Numbered from the stretch's first letter, positions 4,664 through 33,525 are shown. The stretch: 64,000 nucleotides of DNA from IMGVR_UViG_3300017917_003822:124001-188000, one strand, 5' to 3'. Numbers and translations are program-made. Notes: a model not told the origin generated them from the letters alone.

Positions 4664-6553
4664 ATGGCAAAAGTAATTGGAATCGATTTAGGTACTACAA
4701 ACTCATGCGTCTCCGTAATAGAGGGGAATTCTCCGGTTGTTATCGTTAACCAGGAGGGAAAAAGAACAACGCCTAGTGTTGTTTCGTTTAGAGAAGGTGA
4801 AATTAAAATAGGTGATCCTGCAAAAAGACAGGCAGTGACAAATCCCAAAAACACTGTTTATTCTGTTAAGAGGTTCATCGGATCTAATTTCGATGAGATT
4901 AAAAAAGAAGCCAAGAAGATGGCTTATACTGTAAAAGCAGGAAGTGATAAAAAGAAGGTGGTTGTTGAGACCACTGAGAAGGAATATGTTCCTCAAGAGA
5001 TATCAGCTATGGTACTTCAGAATTTAAGAAAGACCGCCGAGGATTATTTGGGTGAGGATGTTAGACAAGCTGTTATTACTGTACCTGCATATTTCAATGA
5101 CAGTCAGAGACAGGCAACCAAGGAGGCTGGAGAAATTGCTGGATTAGAGGTTTTGAGAATTATCAATGAACCCACAGCTGCTGCTTTAGCATACGGTCTA
5201 GATAAGGCAGATAGGGACATGAAGGTTATAGTTTATGATTTGGGCGGTGGTACCTTTGACGTTTCTGTTTTGGAAATTGGATCTGGTGTTTTTGAGGTTC
5301 TGTCAACAAATGGAGATACACATCTGGGTGGGGATAATTTTGATGAGAAAATTATCGATTGGATAGTTCAGGAATTTAAAACCGAATCTGGAGTTGATGC
5401 TTCACAAGATCCGATGGCATATCAAAGAATCAGAGAAGCGGCAGAGAAAGTTAAGGTTGAATTATCGTCCTCTATGGAGTCTGAGATCAATTTACCATAT
5501 TTAAGTGCAGATTCCACTGGACCTAAGCACTTTGTCAAGAAACTTTCCAGAGCACAATTTGAGTCTATGACATCTGATCTGGTTCAAAGAACATTAGAAC
5601 CTTGCAAAAAAGCACTATCTGATGCCGGATTAAAAGCGTCCGATATTGACGAGGTTATTTTAGTTGGTGGATCAACAAGAATACCTAAAGTTCAGGAGGA
5701 AGTTGAAAGATTGTTTGGAAAAAAACCTTCCAAGAATGTTAATCCCGATGAAGTAGTTGCTATTGGTGCTGCTATTCAGGGAGGAGTTTTAACTGGTGAG
5801 GTTAAGGATGTTCTTTTACTTGATGTTACTCCTCTTTCTCTCGGTATAGAAACTATGGGTGGTGTATTTACAAAACTGATCGAATCTAATTCGACCATAC
5901 CAATTAGAAAGAGCCAGGTTTTCTCTACTGCGGTTGATAATCAGCCATCGGTGGAAATCCATGTTCTGCAGGGGGAAAGAGCGATGGCATCTGATAATAG
6001 ATCACTAGGAAGATTTCAGTTAACTGACATTCCGCCAGCTCAAAGAGGAGTTCCGCAAATTGAGGTGACTTTTGATATTGATGCAAATGGAATTATTAGC
6101 GTTTCTGCTACGGATAAGGGAACAGGTAAACAACAGAACATTAAGATAGAATCTGGATCTAAGTTATCTGAGGAAGAAATTGAAAAAATGAAATCAGAAG
6201 CACAAGCTAACGAAGCTTCTGACAGAGAAAGATTAAAGAAAATCCAGATTTTAAACGACTCTGATTCTTTAATTTTTCAAATAGAAAGATCACTAAATGA
6301 TTTTGGTGATAAAGTTACTGAGAGCGATAAGGAGTCCGTTAACAAGATCATCTCTGAATTAAAGAATGCCAGAGAGAGTGAGGACGTTGATCTTATCGAA
6401 TCTAAAATGAAGGAATTGTCGGAGGAGATGTCTAAGGTCTCGGCTTCCGTTTATGCCTCACAAGAACAAAGTAACGAAACACAAGAAAATGAACATGCTC
6501 CGGAACCAGAGGATCACGAGGATATTGAGTTTGAGGAGGTTGAAGAAAAATAA
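4664..6553 (+). CDS. dnaK: Chaperone DnaK (Hsp70)
   Basis: [50 protein letters not shown]. Confidence 0.98.
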
Positions 6554-9101: not shown

Positions 9102-10508
9102 ATGATAATTGACATTGAAAACAAAGGTACGTATCTCAGGGTTTCCCACTTTGGACCTGAAGGTGATTTAGCTTTTTTAGAGGTCCCTGTACCTGAAGAT
9201 CAGAGATTCAACTGGGAAAAATGCAGTCCACATGATCCCAAGAGAGATAAGGAATGGACGAATTGGATGGGTGAGCCAGTTAAGAGAGTTAAAACAGACA
9301 GATATGATAAATATCGGCTTGCACAGATTCTTATTGAGGCACCAGAAGAATTAACTAAGCCCTTATGGGAATTTCAGAATCCAAAAAAATACTTTGTCGA
9401 CATCGAGGTAGAGATAACGGAGGATATGGGAGCTGCTCTTGACACAGAGAATGCTAAAAATCGAGTTATCTCTATCGGGATCGCAACAGACAAAAGAAAG
9501 CTTATAGTTCTAGGTCTTGATCCCTTAACCCCCGAACAACAAGCCAGCATTTACAATAAACTTAATGAGTATTTCAAAAGTACTGGTGACGAATGGTCTT
9601 TCAAATACAAGCAATTCGAAACTGAGTATGATATGATGTACACGTTCTTCCGGGAACTTGGTCCTAAAATGCCGGTAATAACTGGATGGAACTGGCTTGG
9701 CTATGACTGGCCTTATCTAATTAATAGAGCAAAAAGGCTTGGGATAGATCCAAAGATAATTTCGCCTAGCGGAGTCCTTTTAGGTAAAGCACAACTTCCG
9801 ATGCATTTACTTATGTTTGACTACCTTGAAATCTATAAGAAGTGGGATCGCGTAATTAAGATCAAGGAAAGCAATAGACTTGATTATGTTGCAGATAAAG
9901 CTGTTGGATTTAAAAAGATAGAATATAACGGTACACTTAAAGATTTATATCAATCCAATTTCGAAGATTTTATTTACTATAACGCAGTTGACTGTGCGCT
10001 GGTTCATTATATAGATCAGAAGCTAAAAACCATGCAAACATTCTTTAAGATAGCTATGATTTCCGGTGTTGAGATCAATCGATGTCTTTCACCAGTTTGG
10101 TCAACCGAGGTTATGATGCTTAGAAAATTCCACGATAGAAAGCAGGTATTTACTTCAGAAAAAAAAGAGGAGGTTCATGTTAAGTTTGCTGGTGGGTATG
10201 TCAAAGATCCGCTAAAGGGACTACATGAATGGGTGGCATGCTATGATTTTGCCTCACTATATCCTAACACTATGGTTCAATGGGGGATTTCACCCGAAAT
10301 CTACAAAGGTAAAAATCTATTAAATCCCAAGGAAGAATGGGTAAAAACAGCTTCTGGTGCATTTTTCGGATCCGCCGAAGAGAATCCAATTCTCAGAACA
10401 ATTATTAAGGATTTGTACTCCAGAAGAAGAAAAACAAAGGACAGAATGCTAGAGTTGGAGCGAGAAATTGACCAACTAAAAAAAGTTTTAGAAAAAGATA
10501 AAAATTAA
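9102..10508 (+). CDS. Family B DNA polymerase, N-terminal subunit (exonuclease + motif A)
   Basis: ExoI FVDIEVE, ExoII TGWNWLGYDWPYL, ExoIII YNAVD, motif A YDFASLYP; ends in the fingers helix. Confidence 0.92.
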   Translation: MIIDIENKGTYLRVSHFGPEGDLAFLEVPVPEDQRFNWEKCSPHDPKRDKEWTNWMGEPVKRVKTDRYDKYRLAQILIEAPEELTKPLWEFQNPKKYFVDIEVEITEDMGAALDTENAKNRVISIGIATDKRKLIVLGLDPLTPEQQASIYNKLNEYFKSTGDEWSFKYKQFETEYDMMYTFFRELGPKMPVITGWNWLGYDWPYLINRAKRLGIDPKIISPSGVLLGKAQLPMHLLMFDYLEIYKKWDRVIKIKESNRLDYVADKAVGFKKIEYNGTLKDLYQSNFEDFIYYNAVDCALVHYIDQKLKTMQTFFKIAMISGVEINRCLSPVWSTEVMMLRKFHDRKQVFTSEKKEEVHVKFAGGYVKDPLKGLHEWVACYDFASLYPNTMVQWGISPEIYKGKNLLNPKEEWVKTASGAFFGSAEENPILRTIIKDLYSRRRKTKDRMLELEREIDQLKKVLEKDKN

Positions 10509-21335: not shown

Positions 21336-22379
21336 ATGAAAGATTATTATAAAATATTAGGGGTTTCCAGACAAGCCACTCCAGACGAAATCAAGAAAGC
21401 ATATAGAACTTTAGCAATAAAATATCATCCGGATAAAACTGGAAATGATAAGGATGCTGAAATGAAATTCAAGGAGGTCTCTGAGGCATACGAAACTCTA
21501 TCTGACCCGGAAAAGAAATCTTCCTATGACAACCCATATTTTGGAGGTAGCAATGCATTTAATGACATGTTCAGAAATGCTTTCAATGGCAGAAATCCCT
21601 ACCAAAGTGCAGATTTTTCTTCGTTCTTTACTAGAGGAAATCCTGCTCATGAGCCAATGATAAGCAAGGGAAAAAACATTAATATTTATGTTAGCGTCAC
21701 ACTGGAGGAGATGATGAATGGAACAGTTAAGAAGGTTAAGGTCAACCGAAGAGTTCTATGTGATCCCTGCAAGGGTACAGGGGCAGAAAACGGGGAAACT
21801 GTTAACTGTTCAAGTTGTGGAGGTGTTGGTAGAATTAACAAGACGGTACACCATGCATTCGGTGAGGTTGTTATGCAAGAAACATGTAGATCCTGTAATG
21901 GGGTGGGTTCAATAGCAAAATCATACTGTAAGGAATGTTCGGGAGCAGGCACAGTCAGAAAGGAGGAGGAACTTGATATAAACATTCCGAAGGGATCTAT
22001 CAGCGGAGTTTCTTATTTGGTTGTTGGTAAGGGAGACTGGGCAAGATCTCCGTCAAATCCTGGTGATTTGATAGTTAATGTCGAGGAATATGTTCATCCA
22101 GTTTACGTTAGAGATGGGATTAATTTAATACACAATAAATACATTTCATTTAAGGAAGCATGTCTTGGTATCGATGTTGATCTCCCAAATTTAAAGGGAT
22201 CTACGCTCAGAATAAAAATACCACCTGGAACTTCTCCGGGTAAGATACTAAGATTACATGCAAAAGGTCTTCCCGAGTTCAACGGATTTGGGAATGGTGA
22301 CATTCTAGTTAAAGTTCATATATTAATACCTCAGGATCTAACTGAGGAACAAATTAAAGCATTAGATTATTTCGATTAG
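21336..22379 (+). CDS. dnaJ: Chaperone DnaJ
   Basis: J domain with HPD, four CxxCxGxG-type repeats, C-terminal GDILVKV. Confidence 0.96.
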   Translation: MKDYYKILGVSRQATPDEIKKAYRTLAIKYHPDKTGNDKDAEMKFKEVSEAYETLSDPEKKSSYDNPYFGGSNAFNDMFRNAFNGRNPYQSADFSSFFTRGNPAHEPMISKGKNINIYVSVTLEEMMNGTVKKVKVNRRVLCDPCKGTGAENGETVNCSSCGGVGRINKTVHHAFGEVVMQETCRSCNGVGSIAKSYCKECSGAGTVRKEEELDINIPKGSISGVSYLVVGKGDWARSPSNPGDLIVNVEEYVHPVYVRDGINLIHNKYISFKEACLGIDVDLPNLKGSTLRIKIPPGTSPGKILRLHAKGLPEFNGFGNGDILVKVHILIPQDLTEEQIKALDYFD

Positions 22380-24969: not shown

Positions 24970-26118
24970 ATGACTGCAGAGGAAAGAATAGAAATACAGG
25001 AAAAGATCGAAAGCCTGACTTCTCTTAAGAATGAGTTGAAAAACGAGGAACAGGCAATTAAATTGACAATGAACTCCATCTATGGTGCGATTGGTAACAA
25101 CTGGTTTGTTTGTTTCAACCCGGATGTAGCTGAAGCCGTTACTTTGCAGGGTCAGGATCTAATTAAATACTCGGAAAAAATTCTACATAAATATTTTCAC
25201 GAACATTGGCATCTTGACACGGAGCTCCATGAAAAGTTAGGAGTTACTGAGGTAAAGAAAGTAACCAAGCCTCTTGTTATTTATGGAGACACTGATTCTA
25301 ATTATGTTACATTCCAGGAGGTTGTCGATTCGTGTAACTATCAGGGAGATGCGAAGGATTTGATTTTAAAGATTAATGAATATAGACTTAATGAGTATTT
25401 AAGAAAATGCTTCGACATCTACTCTAAAAAATGGAACACTGACAACTATCAGGACTTTGAGCTTGAGACTCTTTCTTTTAATGCTATCTTTTTAGGTAAG
25501 AAAAAATACGTTGCTAACTTAGCTTATGACTCTGGTATTCACACTGATCCTCTTTCACAACTTAAATTTACTGGAGTTGAGATGATAAAGGGTGGGACCC
25601 CACCTTTTGTTAGAGAGAAATTGGTTTATTTAACAAGATTCATATTCTCCCGAGGTAGAAATTTTGACATAAGGGAGTTTGTTAGGGAACTTAAGAATAT
25701 CAAGAAGGAATTCAAAGTACAGGAGCCAAAGAATATATCTGCTTCGGTTAACATTAACAACTACGAAAAGTTTATATTAAATGATACCACTGCTTTTGAG
25801 GTTGCAAAAGCATGTCCGATTCACGTCAGAGCTTCCGGCTATCATAATTTCCTTCTAAATAATTCTAAATACAAGAGCAAATACTCTCTTATCAGAAGCT
25901 CAGAGAAGGTTAATTATTATTTCGTTAAAACAAAATCTGTGGCAGACAATAATGTTTTCGCATACCCTCAGGGAACATTTCCGTACGAGTTTGCCCCACC
26001 AATAGACTATGACGAGCAGTTTACCAAGACTATTCTCGATCCGATTAATAGATTTATTGAAGTAATGGGGTATAATAAGATAAGTCCAAATCTTTTCATG
26101 ATAAACGCTTTATTTTAA
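24970..26118 (+). CDS. Family B DNA polymerase, C-terminal subunit (motifs B and C, thumb)
   Basis: KLTMNSIYG, YGDTDS, KKKY, FTGVE. Confidence 0.93.
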   Translation: MTAEERIEIQEKIESLTSLKNELKNEEQAIKLTMNSIYGAIGNNWFVCFNPDVAEAVTLQGQDLIKYSEKILHKYFHEHWHLDTELHEKLGVTEVKKVTKPLVIYGDTDSNYVTFQEVVDSCNYQGDAKDLILKINEYRLNEYLRKCFDIYSKKWNTDNYQDFELETLSFNAIFLGKKKYVANLAYDSGIHTDPLSQLKFTGVEMIKGGTPPFVREKLVYLTRFIFSRGRNFDIREFVRELKNIKKEFKVQEPKNISASVNINNYEKFILNDTTAFEVAKACPIHVRASGYHNFLLNNSKYKSKYSLIRSSEKVNYYFVKTKSVADNNVFAYPQGTFPYEFAPPIDYDEQFTKTILDPINRFIEVMGYNKISPNLFMINALF

Positions 26119-26675: not shown

Positions 26676-28133
26676 ATGTCAGGTAGAAAAATACTTAACT
26701 TTTTCTCTTTTCTAAACGAAGCTAAAAGTGAAACCACAAAGGTTATTGTTCTAACAGGTAATGTTAAGGGTAGTAAAACCTCAAGTTCATTTATGGAGGA
26801 GTGCAAGAAAAGAGGGATTGAATGCCACGTTGTTGATGTAAACGATGCAACATTGGAAAAAGTTTATAATGGGCACCTATTAAAAACTGAGGAGGAACAA
26901 ATATTAATAGAACCAAACTCAACGGTTATAGTTCCTAGAAGAGGAGTATTAGAAAACTCCCACACAAAGCAAATACTCCTTTCTTTGGAGGAAGCTAGAT
27001 ATTTCACAGTAAACACTCTGGAATCTATGGAGATGTGTGAAAATAAGTTCATTACATCTCAAATAATGGAAGAACATAATTTACCCGTACCTAGATATTC
27101 CTTAGTACCAAATGAGGATTTCTTGGATAAGGCTCTTGAAGCTGTTGGAGGTAAATTCCCTGTTGTGATGAAGTTACTTTCGGGAACCCAAGGTATCGGT
27201 GTTTCTATTGTTGATTCCTATGCATCACTGAAATCTGTTTATCAAACAATCAGAAAACTTGATGACACCAATGAGATATTGATACAGGAAAAAATAGATT
27301 CCAAATCTGATCTTAGAATACAGGTTATTGTTAAGAAATTCGACCCATTAAATGCAGGTAAAGATAACTGTATAATTCTCGGATCTATGAAAAGAGAGGC
27401 GGTGGAGAAAGATTTTAGGACTAATTATTCATTAGGTGGTAAAGTTTCTAAATTTGACATTCCGGAGGAATTGGTTGATATAGCTTGCAAAGCAGCAAAT
27501 GCAGTTGGATGTCATTGGTGTGGTGTTGATATTATGATAGATGAAAAAACACAAAAACCCTATATATTGGAGGTCAATTCTTCACCAGGGACCGAGGGTA
27601 TATCCAAAGCTATAGGTAAACCTATTGTTGATGATGTTCTTGATTACATTCTGGATAAAGAAAATTGGGCATTTTCAACACTTGAAGTTGGATATTTAGA
27701 AAATGTCAATATACCAGGAATTGGTTATATGGTAGCTAAATTTGATACTGGGAATGGATCTAAATCTTGCACACTCCATGCTGATGAGGTTGAGGAGAAG
27801 GATGACAAACTTATTTGGAAAGTTGGTGACAAAAAATTCGTAAATGATATCGTTGGATATTCTGATGCTGAAATCGGTAAGGATATTCACACTAGACCTA
27901 TGATAGAGATGGACGTTGTTATCAACGGAGTTACTATACCAAAGGTAAAAATTTCGCCGACCGACAGAACTGATAAAAGTACACCATTCTTAGCAAATAG
28001 AGCTTTTATGAGAAAGGCTGGTTTAATAGTTAATCCACACAAGGCATTTGTTATTAGTGATGAGCCAGAAACTAAATACGAAGTTGGTAAAGCTAAAGGA
28101 GAACCTCATGCAGGAATAGAATTTGAAAAATAA
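26676..28133 (+). CDS. RimK-family ATP-grasp ligase fused to a C-terminal RimK-associated aspartic protease domain; CTS-like N-terminus
   Basis: NKF.T, FPVVMKLLSGTQGIGV, FRTNYSLGG, GVDIM, LEVNSSPG; then AKFDTGNGSKS...R..M...L.NRAF. Confidence 0.9.
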   Translation: MSGRKILNFFSFLNEAKSETTKVIVLTGNVKGSKTSSSFMEECKKRGIECHVVDVNDATLEKVYNGHLLKTEEEQILIEPNSTVIVPRRGVLENSHTKQILLSLEEARYFTVNTLESMEMCENKFITSQIMEEHNLPVPRYSLVPNEDFLDKALEAVGGKFPVVMKLLSGTQGIGVSIVDSYASLKSVYQTIRKLDDTNEILIQEKIDSKSDLRIQVIVKKFDPLNAGKDNCIILGSMKREAVEKDFRTNYSLGGKVSKFDIPEELVDIACKAANAVGCHWCGVDIMIDEKTQKPYILEVNSSPGTEGISKAIGKPIVDDVLDYILDKENWAFSTLEVGYLENVNIPGIGYMVAKFDTGNGSKSCTLHADEVEEKDDKLIWKVGDKKFVNDIVGYSDAEIGKDIHTRPMIEMDVVINGVTIPKVKISPTDRTDKSTPFLANRAFMRKAGLIVNPHKAFVISDEPETKYEVGKAKGEPHAGIEFEK

Positions 28134-29089: not shown

Positions 29090-30514
29090 ATGGACTTACT
29101 TTCAGCTTTACAACAAGAGAATACCGTAACCGAGAATGGTATGGTGACTAACTCTAGCTCTCTGAAAAATACACTAGATCTTTTCTTTAGAATAGGTGCT
29201 TTGAGAGCAGCGGACCAACAGGATATAGTAAGACAATTTACTCTAGCTTTTGATGAGTCTCCTCAGGATGCTCTTAGAATCTTATTCTGGGCAAGAGATG
29301 TGAGAGGTGGTGCTGGTGAAAGAAGAGTTTTTAGAATCTGTATGTCTCACTTGGCTGAGAGCAATCCACAATCTCTGATTAAAAATTTACACCTAATCCC
29401 AGAATACGGTAGATGGGACGATCTGCTTGTTTTCGCAGGGACTAAGGTTGAGGATGATGCTTTCGACATAATTAAGACCGCATTATATAGTGCTGATAGA
29501 CTTTGTGCCAAATGGATGCCAAGAAAAGGAACCGTTTCCAATGCACTCAGAAAGTATTTGGGGCTAACTCCGAAGGAATATAGAAAACTTCTTGTCGAAA
29601 CCACTGATGTTGTTGAGCAAAAAATGTGTTCCAATAAATTCAACGAAATCGATTATTCAAAAGTTCCTTCACTTGCTGCCGCTAGATACCAGGCCGCATT
29701 TATTAAGAAGGATTCTGATAGATACACCGAATACTTATTAGAGCTGCGAAAACCAGAAGGTGAAAAAACAGCTAAGATTAATGCTTCCGCGGTCTACCCA
29801 TATGATGTTGTCAAATCTCTAAACAGAGGAGTTTGGGAGGTTGCAAATGAACAATGGAATGCACTGCCTAATTATATGGAAGGATCTAGTGAGATGGTAC
29901 TTCCGGTTGTTGATGTCTCTGGTTCAATGACGTCTCCCGTAAGTAGAGGAGGTACACTTAGCTGTATGGACGTTGCTGTTTCATTGGGTCTTTATATTTC
30001 GGAAAGAAATGATGGTCCTTTTAAAGATCATTTCATTACCTTCTCTGAAACTCCAGAATTACAAAAACTTGGTGGTAATTTAAAGGAAAGGTATTTACAA
30101 CTGCGATCATCTGAATGGGGAATGAGTACTAATTTGATCTCCGTATTTGATCTTATTTTGAATCAAGCAACCAAACATAATGTTCCACAGAACAACATGC
30201 CAACCAAAATTCTAATTCTTTCTGACATGGAATTCAACGAGGCGATAGAAGACGGTGAAAGTGTTTCGGCTATAAAAGCAATCAGATCTAAATATGATGC
30301 TGCTGGATATAAAACACCTGACGTAATATTCTGGAATATACAAAGCAGAAGAGGAAATAATATACCGGTCAGATTCGATGAGAGAGGAACTGCTTTAATC
30401 TCAGGATTCTCACCTTCCATTATGAAGTCACTACTTAATGGAAAATCGATTAGTCCTATGGATATCATGTACGAAACTATAAATTCACCTAGATATGAAA
30501 GTATTAAGGCCTGA
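29090..30514 (+). CDS. TROVE/Ro60-like vWA protein (DUF2828 family)
   Basis: FWARDVRGGAGERR, EYGRWDDL, AKWMPR, MIDAS VVDVSGSM, ILILSDMEF, ISGFSPS. Confidence 0.88.
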   Translation: MDLLSALQQENTVTENGMVTNSSSLKNTLDLFFRIGALRAADQQDIVRQFTLAFDESPQDALRILFWARDVRGGAGERRVFRICMSHLAESNPQSLIKNLHLIPEYGRWDDLLVFAGTKVEDDAFDIIKTALYSADRLCAKWMPRKGTVSNALRKYLGLTPKEYRKLLVETTDVVEQKMCSNKFNEIDYSKVPSLAAARYQAAFIKKDSDRYTEYLLELRKPEGEKTAKINASAVYPYDVVKSLNRGVWEVANEQWNALPNYMEGSSEMVLPVVDVSGSMTSPVSRGGTLSCMDVAVSLGLYISERNDGPFKDHFITFSETPELQKLGGNLKERYLQLRSSEWGMSTNLISVFDLILNQATKHNVPQNNMPTKILILSDMEFNEAIEDGESVSAIKAIRSKYDAAGYKTPDVIFWNIQSRRGNNIPVRFDERGTALISGFSPSIMKSLLNGKSISPMDIMYETINSPRYESIKA

Positions 30515-30758
30515 AGCTAGTGAATGTATAAGAGGCGAATCTCTTATTGATGCACTCCTAGATGATGCTGTCATCCAGGCATATAATATAACCGATGATG
30601 AGTATAATAAAATCTGTAGGGAAGCATCGACTGAGGAACTAGATGATTTTTTAGATCCAGTATTTTCATCATCAGGGGTTACATTTTCATCAAGGAAAAA
30701 AGGATTAAAAATAAGAAATAAATATATCGATTATTATCGAAACATTTTTTCAAATTAG
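30495..30758 (+). CDS. Hypothetical protein
   Basis: ORF overlapping the previous stop. Confidence 0.55.
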   Translation: MKVLRPEASECIRGESLIDALLDDAVIQAYNITDDEYNKICREASTEELDDFLDPVFSSSGVTFSSRKKGLKIRNKYIDYYRNIFSN

Positions 30759-30780
30759 GTATATAATATTATATAAATAA

Positions 30781-30932
30781 AGAATCGTTTCAGCAAAGAT
30801 TACAACTATATGACAGCGAATCAGACTTCAATGCCTGATTTAAAAAAAACCGATTCTGAAAAAATACAAGGGATTGTTACAGCACAATACACAACTATTA
30901 TATTTAAGCAATAATTTAGAAAACCAATCCCG
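30781..30932 (+). ncRNA. Two tandem stem-closed small RNAs (candidate Y-RNA-like)
   Basis: AGAATCG/CGATTCT and GGGATTG/CAATCCC stems; shared TT(T/A)CAGCA-N6-ACAACTAT. Confidence 0.6.
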
Positions 30933-30939
30933 CTAATTT

Positions 30940-30970
30940 AAACCCGGTTCCAACAGGACCGGGTTTTTAT
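30940..30970 (+). terminator. Intrinsic terminator
   Basis: AAACCCGGT...ACCGGGTTTTT. Confidence 0.8.
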
Positions 30971-31049
30971 TTGATCGTAAAAATCATAAATATTTTTTTT
31001 AATCCGAGGTACTTTCTTATATTTGTGAAACAAAAAATAAAATATAATT

Positions 31050-33051: not shown

Positions 33052-33522
33052 GGGGCTGACCAGGTATTGATTGGCAGAATTGGTTCTTTGAGATGCAGGC
33101 AGAGTTAGTATTGGAAACTCTTTAATAACCTATACAAAGCTTTAAACGGCAAAACAAATGTTTGGGATGCTATCAACGCGTTTGGTGCTCCCGTAGCTGA
33201 AGTTGAGTACGCAGTAGCTGCTTAACCTCCGGGCCTCACTTGCCTAGAAACAGAAAGGTGAAAGAAAATCCAGATGGCTCCCTTAATAGTCTTGGCTGAC
33301 CAAGAGCATCTGACCGTAATCGGTCTATACAGGGGGCGAAAGAGTGCGGGTAGCAGGGGCAGGCCCGTCTAAAATAACTAGTTGCCGACCAGGTTGTTTG
33401 GAAGTTTGGTTCCCACATATATCAAATTTCATATTTTGCTAATTTAGAAAAATTAGCTAAGCCTGTGAATGAGTCCTTAGGGTTAACTGAGCAAGACGGC
33501 GGTTCGATTCCGCCCAGTTCCA
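33052..33522 (+). ncRNA. ssrA: tmRNA; tag (A)GKTNVWDAINAFGAPVAEVEYAVAA* at 33148-33225
   Basis: 5' GGGGCTG pairs with 3' CAGTTCC-A (G3.U); T-arm GGCGGTTCGATTCCGCC; ORF ending YAVAA-TAA. Confidence 0.95.
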
Positions 33523-33525
33523 CTG

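What the first reader, a model, noticed from the sequence alone, without database searches (positions are those of the whole stretch)
29090..30970. Ro60-like protein followed by a tandem pair of covarying small RNAs
Seen: unit 1 (30781-30857) AGAATCG...CGATTCT and unit 2 (30870-30931) GGGATTG...CAATCCC, i.e. three compensatory pair changes. Both carry TT(T/A)CAGCA-N6-ACAACTAT after the 5' arm and AAAAC before the 3' arm, giving a possible bulged C. An AT-rich promoter region precedes them and a strong terminator follows. Known: Ro60/TROVE proteins bind Y RNAs through a bulged-C terminal helix. Inference: a phage RNP for RNA quality control or repair, or a decoy against tRNA-targeting defences. 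The sequence does not match canonical Y RNA.
Basis: partly seen in the sequence, partly recalled or inferred. Interest (0 to 1): 0.8.

Follow-up and report, generated by a model that had tools for sequence, protein, structure and literature searches.

The report
Phage Ro60-like protein with partner RNAs
A jumbo phage encodes a distant structural relative of the RNA-quality-control protein Ro60, followed by two small RNAs of a class not in Rfam that sits beside the same gene in many unrelated phages and is probably its long-suspected RNA partner.

Summary
ORF 29090-30514 is a Pfam DUF2828+DUF7788 protein (PHROG 850). Its AlphaFold model matches only Ro60 structures over its full length: Thermus phage phiLo Ro60 and Deinococcus Rsr.

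Units 30781-30858 and 30870-30932 lie between a TATAAT box and a strong terminator. Both belong to an RNA class absent from Rfam 15. The class has four parts:
- a 7-bp helix formed by the two ends;
- U(U/A)N-CAGCA(A/C) directly after the 5' strand;
- an A-rich, G-poor interior;
- an invariant unpaired G after the 3' strand.

A covariance model finds it only on the gene's strand, next to the gene, in 51 of 57 metagenomic loci. It also finds it in Felixounavirus, Listeria, Campylobacter, Enterococcus and cluster-L mycobacteriophages. The helix is about 96% paired, and all seven pairs covary in an independent set.

Relatives use the same module to close hairpins, tRNA-like domains and roughly 250-nt structured RNAs. 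T4-like phages carry it circularly permuted inside tRNA-like RNAs.

Most likely this is a Y-RNA-like RNP. Binding, and transcription in this phage, remain unshown. In phage Bas63 the orthologue counters the ppl defence.

The parts
29090..30514 (+). Gene for a 474-aa Ro60-fold protein: helical DUF2828 N-terminal part plus a vWA-like DUF7788 C-terminal part with an intact MIDAS motif (DVSGSM...T...D)
   Evidence: Pfam DUF7788 2.6e-51 and DUF2828 3.2e-32. PHROG 850 'RNA-binding protein' 7e-152. AF2 pLDDT 79, pTM 0.76. Foldseek 9kop/9l5y E 4e-9 with TM 0.56, and 2nvo E 8e-7. Invariant D275, S277, S279, T347, D379.
30495..30758 (+). 87-aa ORF of unknown function between the gene and the RNAs; an optional insertion, not part of the core system
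   Evidence: A homologous 86-aa ORF is present in L002. It is absent in L001 and L004-L007, where the RNAs follow the gene directly. No Pfam or PHROG hit.
30762..30767 (+). -10-like TATAAT, likely promoter of the RNA pair, placing the start a few bases before the 5' arm
   Evidence: Read from the sequence. cATATAA(A/T) lies 10-13 nt upstream of the arm in L001, L002, L004, L005 and L007. It was not listed by the consensus promoter scan.
30781..30858 (+). Unit 1: 5' arm 30781-30787; UUU-CAGCAA 30788-30796; internal hairpin 30818-30841; A-run 30842-30849; 3' arm 30851-30857; unpaired G 30858
   Evidence: CM R1 26.3 bits, E 1.8e-4, not in the seed. Fold. The five closest homologues keep a hairpin of different sequence at the same place.
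30870..30932 (+). Unit 2, the minimal form: 5' arm 30870-30876; UUA-CAGCAC 30877-30885; unstructured A-rich loop; 3' arm 30925-30931; unpaired G 30932
   Evidence: CM R1 51 bits. Helix covariation. The G after the helix is present in 58 of 60 units, and the 2 exceptions are mis-registered hits.
30940..30973 (+). Intrinsic terminator closing the RNA pair
   Evidence: 11-bp stem, 6 G-C pairs, 5-nt loop, T-run. Equivalent terminators follow the last unit in relatives.

Best explanation
The locus encodes a Y-RNA-like ribonucleoprotein of a distinct lineage.

The protein has the Ro60 architecture, a helical-repeat ring plus a vWA domain with MIDAS, but belongs to the DUF2828/DUF7788 family (PHROG 850).

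The two RNAs are probably made as one roughly 190-nt transcript running from a TATAAT box to the terminator. Each folds by pairing its two ends into a 7-bp helix.

The conserved module is that helix (G2-C and U5-A nearly fixed, the other pairs free to covary), the single-stranded U(U/A)N-CAGCAA leaving its 5' strand, an A-run entering its 3' strand, and one unpaired G beyond the helix. I propose this module is the docking site for the Ro-like protein.

Whatever lies inside the loop would then be the effector or tether part, as in Ro60-Y RNA particles. In unit 2 that is nothing. In unit 1 it is a hairpin. In relatives it is a tRNA-like domain or a roughly 250-nt structured RNA.

The particle would act on RNA during infection (surveillance, decay or repair), probably as a counter-defence.

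Shown here: the fold similarity, the RNA family, its covariation, and its linkage to the gene.
Inferred: transcription in this phage, protein-RNA binding, and function.
For: Protein
- The only significant full-length structural matches are Ro60 proteins.
- The MIDAS residues are invariant.

RNA family
- Hits with E<0.01 occur in 51 of 57 metagenomic loci. All 65 are on the gene's strand and directly 3' of the gene.
- The helix is 96.7% paired and 5 of 7 pairs show compensatory change. Controls with the partner slid by 1-3 columns give 22-59%.
- In an independent set (cultured phages and MAG contigs, protein 31-57% identical) there are 26 hits, all on the gene's strand. The helix is 96% paired and 7 of 7 pairs covary.
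- The G after the helix is present in 58 of 60 units.
- Loops contain 9% G against 20% in the background.

Linkage to the gene
- The same units lie beside the orthologue in Suspvirus SUSP2, Felixounavirus Bas63, Listeria LP-124, Campylobacter CP30A, Enterococcus VRE9_1, Synechococcus B23 and mycobacteriophage Winky. The other neighbouring genes differ among these phages.

Modularity
- The same helix and motif close roughly 240-270-nt conserved RNAs.
- They also close a T-arm-bearing RNA in Winky and in L008.
- In T4-like phages the module occurs circularly permuted, as a 7-bp hairpin whose loop usually starts with G, followed by 3 nt and CNGCA. It sits in the anticodon-arm position of tRNA-like RNAs.

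Precedent
- True TROVE phage Ro60 genes also carry 2-3 tandem Y-like RNAs, one of them tRNA-like: Bxz1 and phiLo (PMC12135203).

Function
- Bas63 gp130, 42% identical to the window protein (E 5e-121), counters the ppl defence system (bioRxiv 10.1101/2024.10.10.617714).
- The Listeria phage CKA15 homologue lies less than 2 kb downstream of three very highly transcribed non-coding regions (PMC12282133).
Against: - There is no transcript evidence for this phage. The one metatranscriptome holding it has two low-depth contigs inside the protein gene and none over the RNAs.
- There are no binding data anywhere.
- Folding energies of the single units are not exceptional.
- Pfam TROVE does not match. 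Profile comparison with a true phage Ro60 aligns only the MIDAS region (probability 48%).
- Canonical Ro-binding motifs (GGUCCGA, GNCGAA, bulged C) are absent.
- Adjacency is not universal. Vibrio K566 and Sinorhizobium phiN3 show no unit within 3 kb.
- In Ounavirinae the units sit inside tRNA arrays, which also fits a tRNA-related role independent of the protein.
Confidence: 0.68

Rival explanations
1. The units are elements of phage tRNA operons (processing punctuation, tRNA-like decoys, or ligands of a host tRNA or RNA enzyme). They work independently of the Ro-like protein, and the adjacency only reflects both being parked in the tRNA/RNA region.
For: In SUSP2 and Bas63 the units fill the gaps between tRNA genes at 10-15-nt spacing. 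tRNAs or a tmRNA lie nearby in many loci. T4-like phages embed the motif in tRNA-like scaffolds. The 7-bp terminal helix plus one unpaired 3' base resembles an acceptor stem with a discriminator base.
Against: The window has no tRNA gene in 64 kb, only a tmRNA 2 kb away, yet the units abut the Ro-like gene. In 51 metagenomic loci they directly follow the gene. In Listeria, Campylobacter and Enterococcus phages they directly precede it. The Ro-like gene is the only neighbour shared across all these phages. The permuted form lacks free ends, so an acceptor-stem role is not required.
Confidence: 0.15
2. The units are cis-acting parts of the Ro-like gene's own mRNA, acting as UTR stabilisers or autoregulatory operator sites rather than as separate RNAs.
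For: They are on the same strand. In L001 and L004-L007 they follow about 50 nt after the stop codon with no terminator in between. In Vibrio phage K566 a UAUACAGCAAAC sits in the gene's 5' UTR.
Against: A conserved -10-like box precedes the units. In Ounavirinae two tRNA genes separate them from the gene. They occur in 2-4 copies with elaborate inserts such as tRNA-like domains and 250-nt structured RNAs. An 87-aa ORF can be inserted between the gene and the units.
Confidence: 0.08
3. This is a chance inverted repeat or a DNA-level repeat (a protein-binding site or recombination site) with no RNA function.
For: The region is AT-rich. Single-sequence folding z-scores are weak. G-U (9) and A-C (5) mismatch counts in the helix do not by themselves discriminate between the strands.
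Against: All 91 significant hits are on one strand relative to the gene. The conserved motif is asymmetric and G is depleted on that strand. Covariation holds across phages of five bacterial phyla. T-arm and tRNA-like inserts occur. A terminator follows the array.
Confidence: 0.02

Closest known systems
Bacterial Ro60 (Rsr) with Y RNAs: Deinococcus Yrn1, Salmonella YrlA/YrlB (Chen et al. 2014, PMC4201824)
   Same: A ring-plus-vWA protein is encoded next to, and on the same strand as, one or more small RNAs. The 5' and 3' ends of each RNA pair. A short conserved motif sits next to the 5' strand. A second module, often tRNA-like, is variable.
   Different: The protein is DUF2828/DUF7788, not Pfam TROVE. 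The RNA motif is U(U/A)N-CAGCAA plus a 3' G, not GNCGAA(N)G. The window's own RNAs have no tRNA-like domain. No Rfam family matches.
Phage TROVE-type Ro60 with tandem Y-like RNAs: Thermus phage phiLo Ro60-Yrl1/Yrl2 (PMC12135203; PDB 9KOP, 9L5Y) and mycobacteriophage Bxz1 gp220
   Same: These are the best structural matches to the window protein. They also have 2-3 tandem Y-like RNAs beside the gene, one of them tRNA-like in Bxz1. phiLo Ro60 binds its RNAs and host PNPase.
   Different: Bxz1 gp220 matches Pfam TROVE and vWA_Ro60. Its RNAs are closed by a GGCCGA...CAUGUCU module with no CAGCAA. Sequence similarity to the window protein is limited to the MIDAS region.
Felixounavirus Bas63 gp130 (PhageMaP preprint, 10.1101/2024.10.10.617714)
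   Same: It is an orthologue of the window protein: 42% identity over the full length, E 5e-121. The authors noted its Ro60-like structure and guessed that some neighbouring 'tRNAs' are Y RNAs.
   Different: The partner RNAs were not identified there. The model built here finds 3-4 units in the unannotated gaps of the Bas63 tRNA array, at L144 10073-10139, 10240-10297, 10695-10762 and 10782-10841. A function is known there (counter to ppl) and is untested for the window phage.
Listeria phage CKA15_055 and its neighbouring abundant non-coding transcripts (PMC12282133)
   Same: The homologous protein had Rsr as its top HHpred hit. Highly transcribed non-coding regions lie within 2 kb upstream, and the authors suggested they might be Y RNAs. 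The near-identical LP-124 carries three units directly upstream of the gene.
   Different: The paper gives no RNA family. Its most abundant region maps onto a ROOL-like RNA. Whether the other two abundant regions are the units could not be checked from the text.

Membership tests
Ro60 / TROVE proteins | Match to the Pfam TROVE domain (PF05731) and the Ro60 vWA domain (PF25045) | tested here: not met
   Pfam gives DUF2828 and DUF7788 only. A true phage Ro60 (Bxz1 gp220) matches both Ro60 models. hhalign between the two aligns 41 columns around MIDAS, probability 48%.
Ro60 / TROVE proteins | Helical-repeat ring closed by a C-terminal vWA domain (three-dimensional architecture) | tested here: met
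   AF2 model with pLDDT 79. The top three Foldseek PDB hits are Ro60 proteins aligned over about 500 columns: E 3.8e-9, 1.5e-8 and 8.1e-7. The next hits are isolated vWA domains at E > 5e-3.
Ro60 / TROVE proteins | MIDAS motif DxSxS...T...D in the vWA domain | tested here: met
   D275, S277, S279, T347 and D379 are invariant in 26 homologues.
Ro60 / TROVE proteins | Binds Y RNA on the ring surface and misfolded RNA ends in the cavity | not testable with these tools
   Needs RIP/EMSA or a structure.
Y RNA (metazoan, Rfam RF00019) | Covariance-model match; conserved bulged helix GGUCCGA with a bulged C | tested here: not met
   No Y_RNA hit even at E<=10. The base before the 3' arm is variable, so there is no conserved bulge.
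Y RNA (metazoan, Rfam RF00019) | The 5' and 3' ends pair into a terminal stem | tested here: met
   7-bp terminal helix with covariation.
Bacterial YrlA-type Y RNA | Encoded within 4 kb of the Ro60 gene on the same strand | tested here: met
   All 91 significant hits are on the gene's strand, within about 1.1 kb of the gene. The gene is Ro60-fold, not TROVE.
Bacterial YrlA-type Y RNA | GNCGAA(N0-1)G motif near the 5' end | tested here: not met
   The conserved motif is U(U/A)N-CAGCA(A/C). The GNCGAA-like motif is seen in Bxz1 Y-like RNAs but not here.
Bacterial YrlA-type Y RNA | tRNA-like domain with D and T arms | tested here: not met
   Window unit 1 holds only a plain hairpin and unit 2 holds nothing. 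Relatives do carry T-arm or tRNA-like parts: Winky, L008 and T4-like phages.
tRNA | Cloverleaf recognised by ARAGORN or Rfam RF00005 | tested here: not met
   No tRNA call at the units.

The most novel reading that the evidence does not exclude
The 7-bp helix, CAGCAA and 3' G form a portable, circularly permutable protein-recognition tag. It defines a large, undescribed superfamily of phage non-coding RNAs: minimal loops, tRNA mimics and roughly 250-nt structured RNAs. All of these would be loaded onto one widespread Ro60-fold protein (PHROG 850, found in over 700 cultured phage genomes), making a modular RNP that phages use to defeat host defences such as ppl.
Probability: 0.45. Interest if true: 0.9.

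Novelty: new variant of a known kind. Interest (0 to 1): 0.8.

Why it matters
The protein family is very common. It has at least 7,956 database relatives and occurs in 711 cultured phage records, including Felix O1-like, P100/A511-like, Campylobacter, staphylococcal and cluster-L mycobacteriophages. It is annotated only as 'RNA-binding protein' or 'Ro-like'.

Two recent papers guessed that it has Y-RNA partners but could not name them. This finding supplies a concrete, searchable RNA signature for those partners. It locates them in genetically tractable phages such as Bas63, where the protein already has a counter-defence phenotype. It also shows that the recognition module is grafted onto very different RNA bodies.

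That makes the mechanism of a widespread phage RNP directly testable. It would also add several families to the catalogue of structured phage RNAs.

Tried and rejected
- Rfam 15 at gathering and E-value thresholds, on the window and on 24 related loci. Nothing was found at the units. Sub-threshold snoRNA and CRISPR-repeat hits (E 0.4-2) are chance.
- Sequence-only search of the PDB. No Ro60 was found with the single sequence, and the profile gave only E 0.13 at the MIDAS region.
- Megablast of the locus against cultured phages. No match.
- Expression. No RNA run was listed for the RNA region. The one metatranscriptome laid on the window covered only parts of the protein gene at low depth. Expression in this phage is therefore unresolved.
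- MAFFT plus RNAalifold on the long units recovered only the closing helix and two short inner helices. The full structure of the roughly 250-nt RNAs was not solved.
- Alignment-based folding of the unit-1 homologues could not align the inner hairpins. Single folds were used instead.
- The supplementary tables of Chen et al. 2014, listing their 22 phages, are not held. I could not check whether any DUF2828-type phage was in their set.
- The search for related loci with the SUSP2 protein returned only close Ounavirinae relatives.
- Helix G-U versus A-C counts (9 versus 5) were too few to serve as a strand test.

Readings considered and rejected: retron msr/msd (no reverse transcriptase nearby), type III antitoxin repeats (the units are not sequence repeats), and a CsrA sponge (the GGA lies inside the helix and is not universal).

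Full report
**Observation.**
- Unit 1 runs 30781-30857, with arms AGAATCG and CGATTCT.
- Unit 2 runs 30870-30931, with arms GGGATTG and CAATCCC.
- The two helices differ at pairs 1, 3 and 6, each change compensated.
- Both units carry TT(T/A)CAGCA, six bases, then ACAACTAT.
- A strong intrinsic terminator follows at 30940-30966.
- A TATAAT lies at 30762-30767, although the consensus promoter scan lists no full site there.
- Single-sequence folds show the terminal helices, plus a hairpin at 30818-30841 in unit 1, but their energies are ordinary (z -1.0 to -1.6).

The case therefore has to rest on comparison with related sequences.

**The protein.** ORF 29090-30514 (474 aa) matches Pfam DUF2828 and DUF7788 and PHROG 850 'RNA-binding protein'.
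- Sequence searches against the PDB do not find Ro60. A family profile touches a phage TROVE protein only at the MIDAS motif, at E 0.13.
- An AlphaFold2 model built on 26 homologues (pLDDT 79, pTM 0.76) has three significant full-length matches in the PDB, and all three are Ro60 proteins. They are Thermus phage phiLo Ro60 (9kop and 9l5y; E 4e-9 and 1.5e-8, TM about 0.56) and Deinococcus Rsr (2nvo; E 8e-7). Everything else is an isolated vWA domain.
- The MIDAS residues are invariant.

'Ro60-like' therefore holds at the level of architecture, not Pfam membership. Against a true phage Ro60, Bxz1 gp220 (which matches TROVE and vWA_Ro60), profile comparison aligns only 41 columns.

**The RNA family.** Eighty IMG/VR loci encoding 55-100% identical homologues were fetched. 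The window itself is part of a 270-kb viral contig.
- Reading downstream of the gene showed the same design in locus after locus. A 7-nt arm is followed by U(U/A)N-CAGCAA, an A-rich stretch and the complementary arm, and the arm sequences differ between loci.
- A covariance model built from 34 short units found 65 hits at E<0.01 in 51 of 57 non-redundant loci and in the window. Every hit was on the gene's strand and directly 3' of the gene.
- With filters off, the 64-kb window has only the two units. Unit 1 was not in the seed and scores E 1.8e-4. The next hit has E 0.43.
- The helix is 96.7% paired over 52 distinct sequences, and 5 of 7 pairs show compensatory change. Sliding the partner strand by 1-3 columns drops pairing to 22-59%.
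- Pairs 2 (G-C) and 5 (U-A) are almost fixed.
- The base after the 3' arm is G in 58 of 60 units, and the two exceptions are mis-registered hits.
- The loops of the short units are 50% A and 9% G, against 20% G in the background. They are probably single-stranded.

**Independent confirmation in distant phages.** tblastn finds the protein in 711 cultured phage records at 29-52% identity. All those checked are DUF2828/DUF7788. Without retraining, the model finds units beside the gene in:
- Suspvirus SUSP2;
- Felixounavirus Bas63;
- Listeria phage LP-124;
- Campylobacter phage CP30A;
- Enterococcus phage VRE9_1;
- Synechococcus phage B23;
- mycobacteriophage Winky, whose gene is annotated 'Ro-like RNA binding protein';
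- MAG contigs from the genome collection.

In this independent set all 26 hits are on the gene's strand, the helix is 96% paired and all seven pairs covary. The other neighbouring genes differ completely among these phages. The Ro-like gene is the only constant companion.

**Modularity.** In the window's clade, unit 1 always carries a hairpin of unrelated sequence just before the A-run, and unit 2 is bare.
- Other clades use the same helix and motif to close a T-arm-bearing RNA (Winky, L008).
- Others close a conserved RNA of about 240-270 nt with long-range covarying pairs. Rfam has no family for it.
- T4-like phages (Citrobacter Ci1, Aeromonas Ah1, Synechococcus B23 and one MAG contig) have roughly 115-nt tRNA-like RNAs that ARAGORN does not call. 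Each holds, in the anticodon-arm position, a 7-bp hairpin whose loop usually begins with G, followed by three bases and C(A/C/U)GCA(A/U). The T arm lies 33-37 nt further on.

That last arrangement is the same module circularly permuted. The 3' arm and its G are joined by a short loop to the 5' arm and its motif. The module therefore works without free ends, which favours a protein-binding tag over an acceptor-stem mimic.

**Comparison with known systems.** Ro60 orthologues with adjacent Y RNAs are known in bacteria and in some phages (PMC4201824; PMC12135203).
- I read the Y-like RNAs of mycobacteriophage Bxz1. There are three tandem RNAs upstream of gp220, the middle one with D and T arms. 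They are closed by a GGCCGA...CAUGUCU module and contain no CAGCAA.
- The organisation is therefore parallel, but both the protein branch and the RNA recognition module differ.
- For the DUF2828 branch, two papers speculated about Y RNAs without identifying them.
- In Listeria phage CKA15 the homologue (also found in virions) lies less than 2 kb downstream of three extremely abundant non-coding transcripts (PMC12282133). By coordinate mapping, the most abundant of these is a ROOL-like RNA.
- In Felixounavirus Bas63, gp130 counters the ppl defence system. I confirmed that gp130 is an orthologue, at 42% identity and E 5e-121. Three to four units occupy the unannotated gaps of the tRNA array just downstream.
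- I found no description of this RNA class in six full-text literature searches.

**Mechanism.** The best-supported reading is a Y-RNA-like RNP. The protein would dock on the helix/CAGCAA/G module, and the loop contents would provide a tether or regulator. The particle would act on RNA during infection, plausibly as a counter-defence.
- The surrounding genes are RNA- and translation-related: a RimK-like ATP-grasp upstream, a phage tmRNA 2 kb downstream that is syntenic in four relatives, RtcB near the Listeria locus, and tRNA arrays elsewhere.
- Not shown: transcription in this phage, since the single metatranscriptome covers only the protein gene at low depth. Binding and function are also not shown.
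- The main rival is a tRNA-operon element independent of the protein. It is weakened because the units stay next to the gene where no tRNA gene is present, as in this window.

**Verdict.** This is a real feature and a strongly supported RNA family, very probably the cognate partner of a widespread Ro60-fold phage protein. It is a new variant of the Ro60-Y RNA kind and is readily testable in Bas63.

Noticed in passing
window 33052-33525 (+): A phage-encoded tmRNA (ARAGORN tag EVEYAVAA; Rfam 59 bits). A syntenic tmRNA lies 1.2-2.3 kb downstream of the RNA pair in L001, L002, L004 and L005.
   Followed up: partly
window 26676-28133 (+): A RimK-like ATP-grasp protein (PHROG 2599, 'ribosomal protein S6 glutaminyl transferase') lies just upstream of the Ro-like gene. 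Together with the tmRNA it gives the neighbourhood a translation/RNA flavour.
   Followed up: no
window 30495-30758 (+): An 87-aa ORF overlaps the stop codon of the Ro-like gene. It is conserved in L002 (86 aa) but absent in the other close relatives, and has no family match.
   Followed up: partly
window 9102-10508 and 24970-26118 (+): The family B DNA polymerase appears to be split into two ORFs about 14 kb apart. The first holds the exonuclease domain and the start of the polymerase domain, the second a later polymerase part. The window also has phage-encoded Hsp70 (4664-6553) and DnaJ (21336-22379).
   Followed up: no
L083 1465-2016 (Listeria phage LP-124): A ROOL-like RNA scores 87.4 bits, just under Rfam's cut-off of 99.1 (E 1.5e-16). 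By coordinate mapping it corresponds to the most highly transcribed, unidentified region of phage CKA15, 26,236-26,727.
   Followed up: partly
L016-L078, e.g. L017 4510-4759 (alignment A6): Conserved structured RNAs of about 240-270 nt are closed by the same helix and CAGCAA motif. They have covarying long-range pairs and no Rfam family.
   Followed up: partly
L081 4361-4478 and 4482-4598; L112 6655-6770 and 6795-6912; L114 4869-4978: T4-like phages carry roughly 115-nt tRNA-like RNAs, annotated as tRNA-OTHER or pseudo-tRNA and not called by ARAGORN. They hold a circularly permuted copy of the module in the anticodon-arm position.
   Followed up: partly
L111 2956-2975 (Vibrio phage K566): UAUACAGCAAAC lies in the 5' UTR of the Ro-like gene itself, and no complete unit lies nearby. 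This may hint at autoregulation or may be chance.
   Followed up: no
L144 10695-10841 (Bas63); L082 4326-4496 (SUSP2): Small 'hypothetical protein' CDSs annotated in the tRNA arrays of Ounavirinae (bas63_0137, bas63_0138, ALH47156) overlap predicted units. They are probably mis-annotations.
   Followed up: no
window 30825, 30842, 30894, 30923: A 99.4%-identical strain in another metagenome (run X2) differs at four places in the RNA region. None falls in the arms, the CAGCA motif or the 3' G.
   Followed up: no
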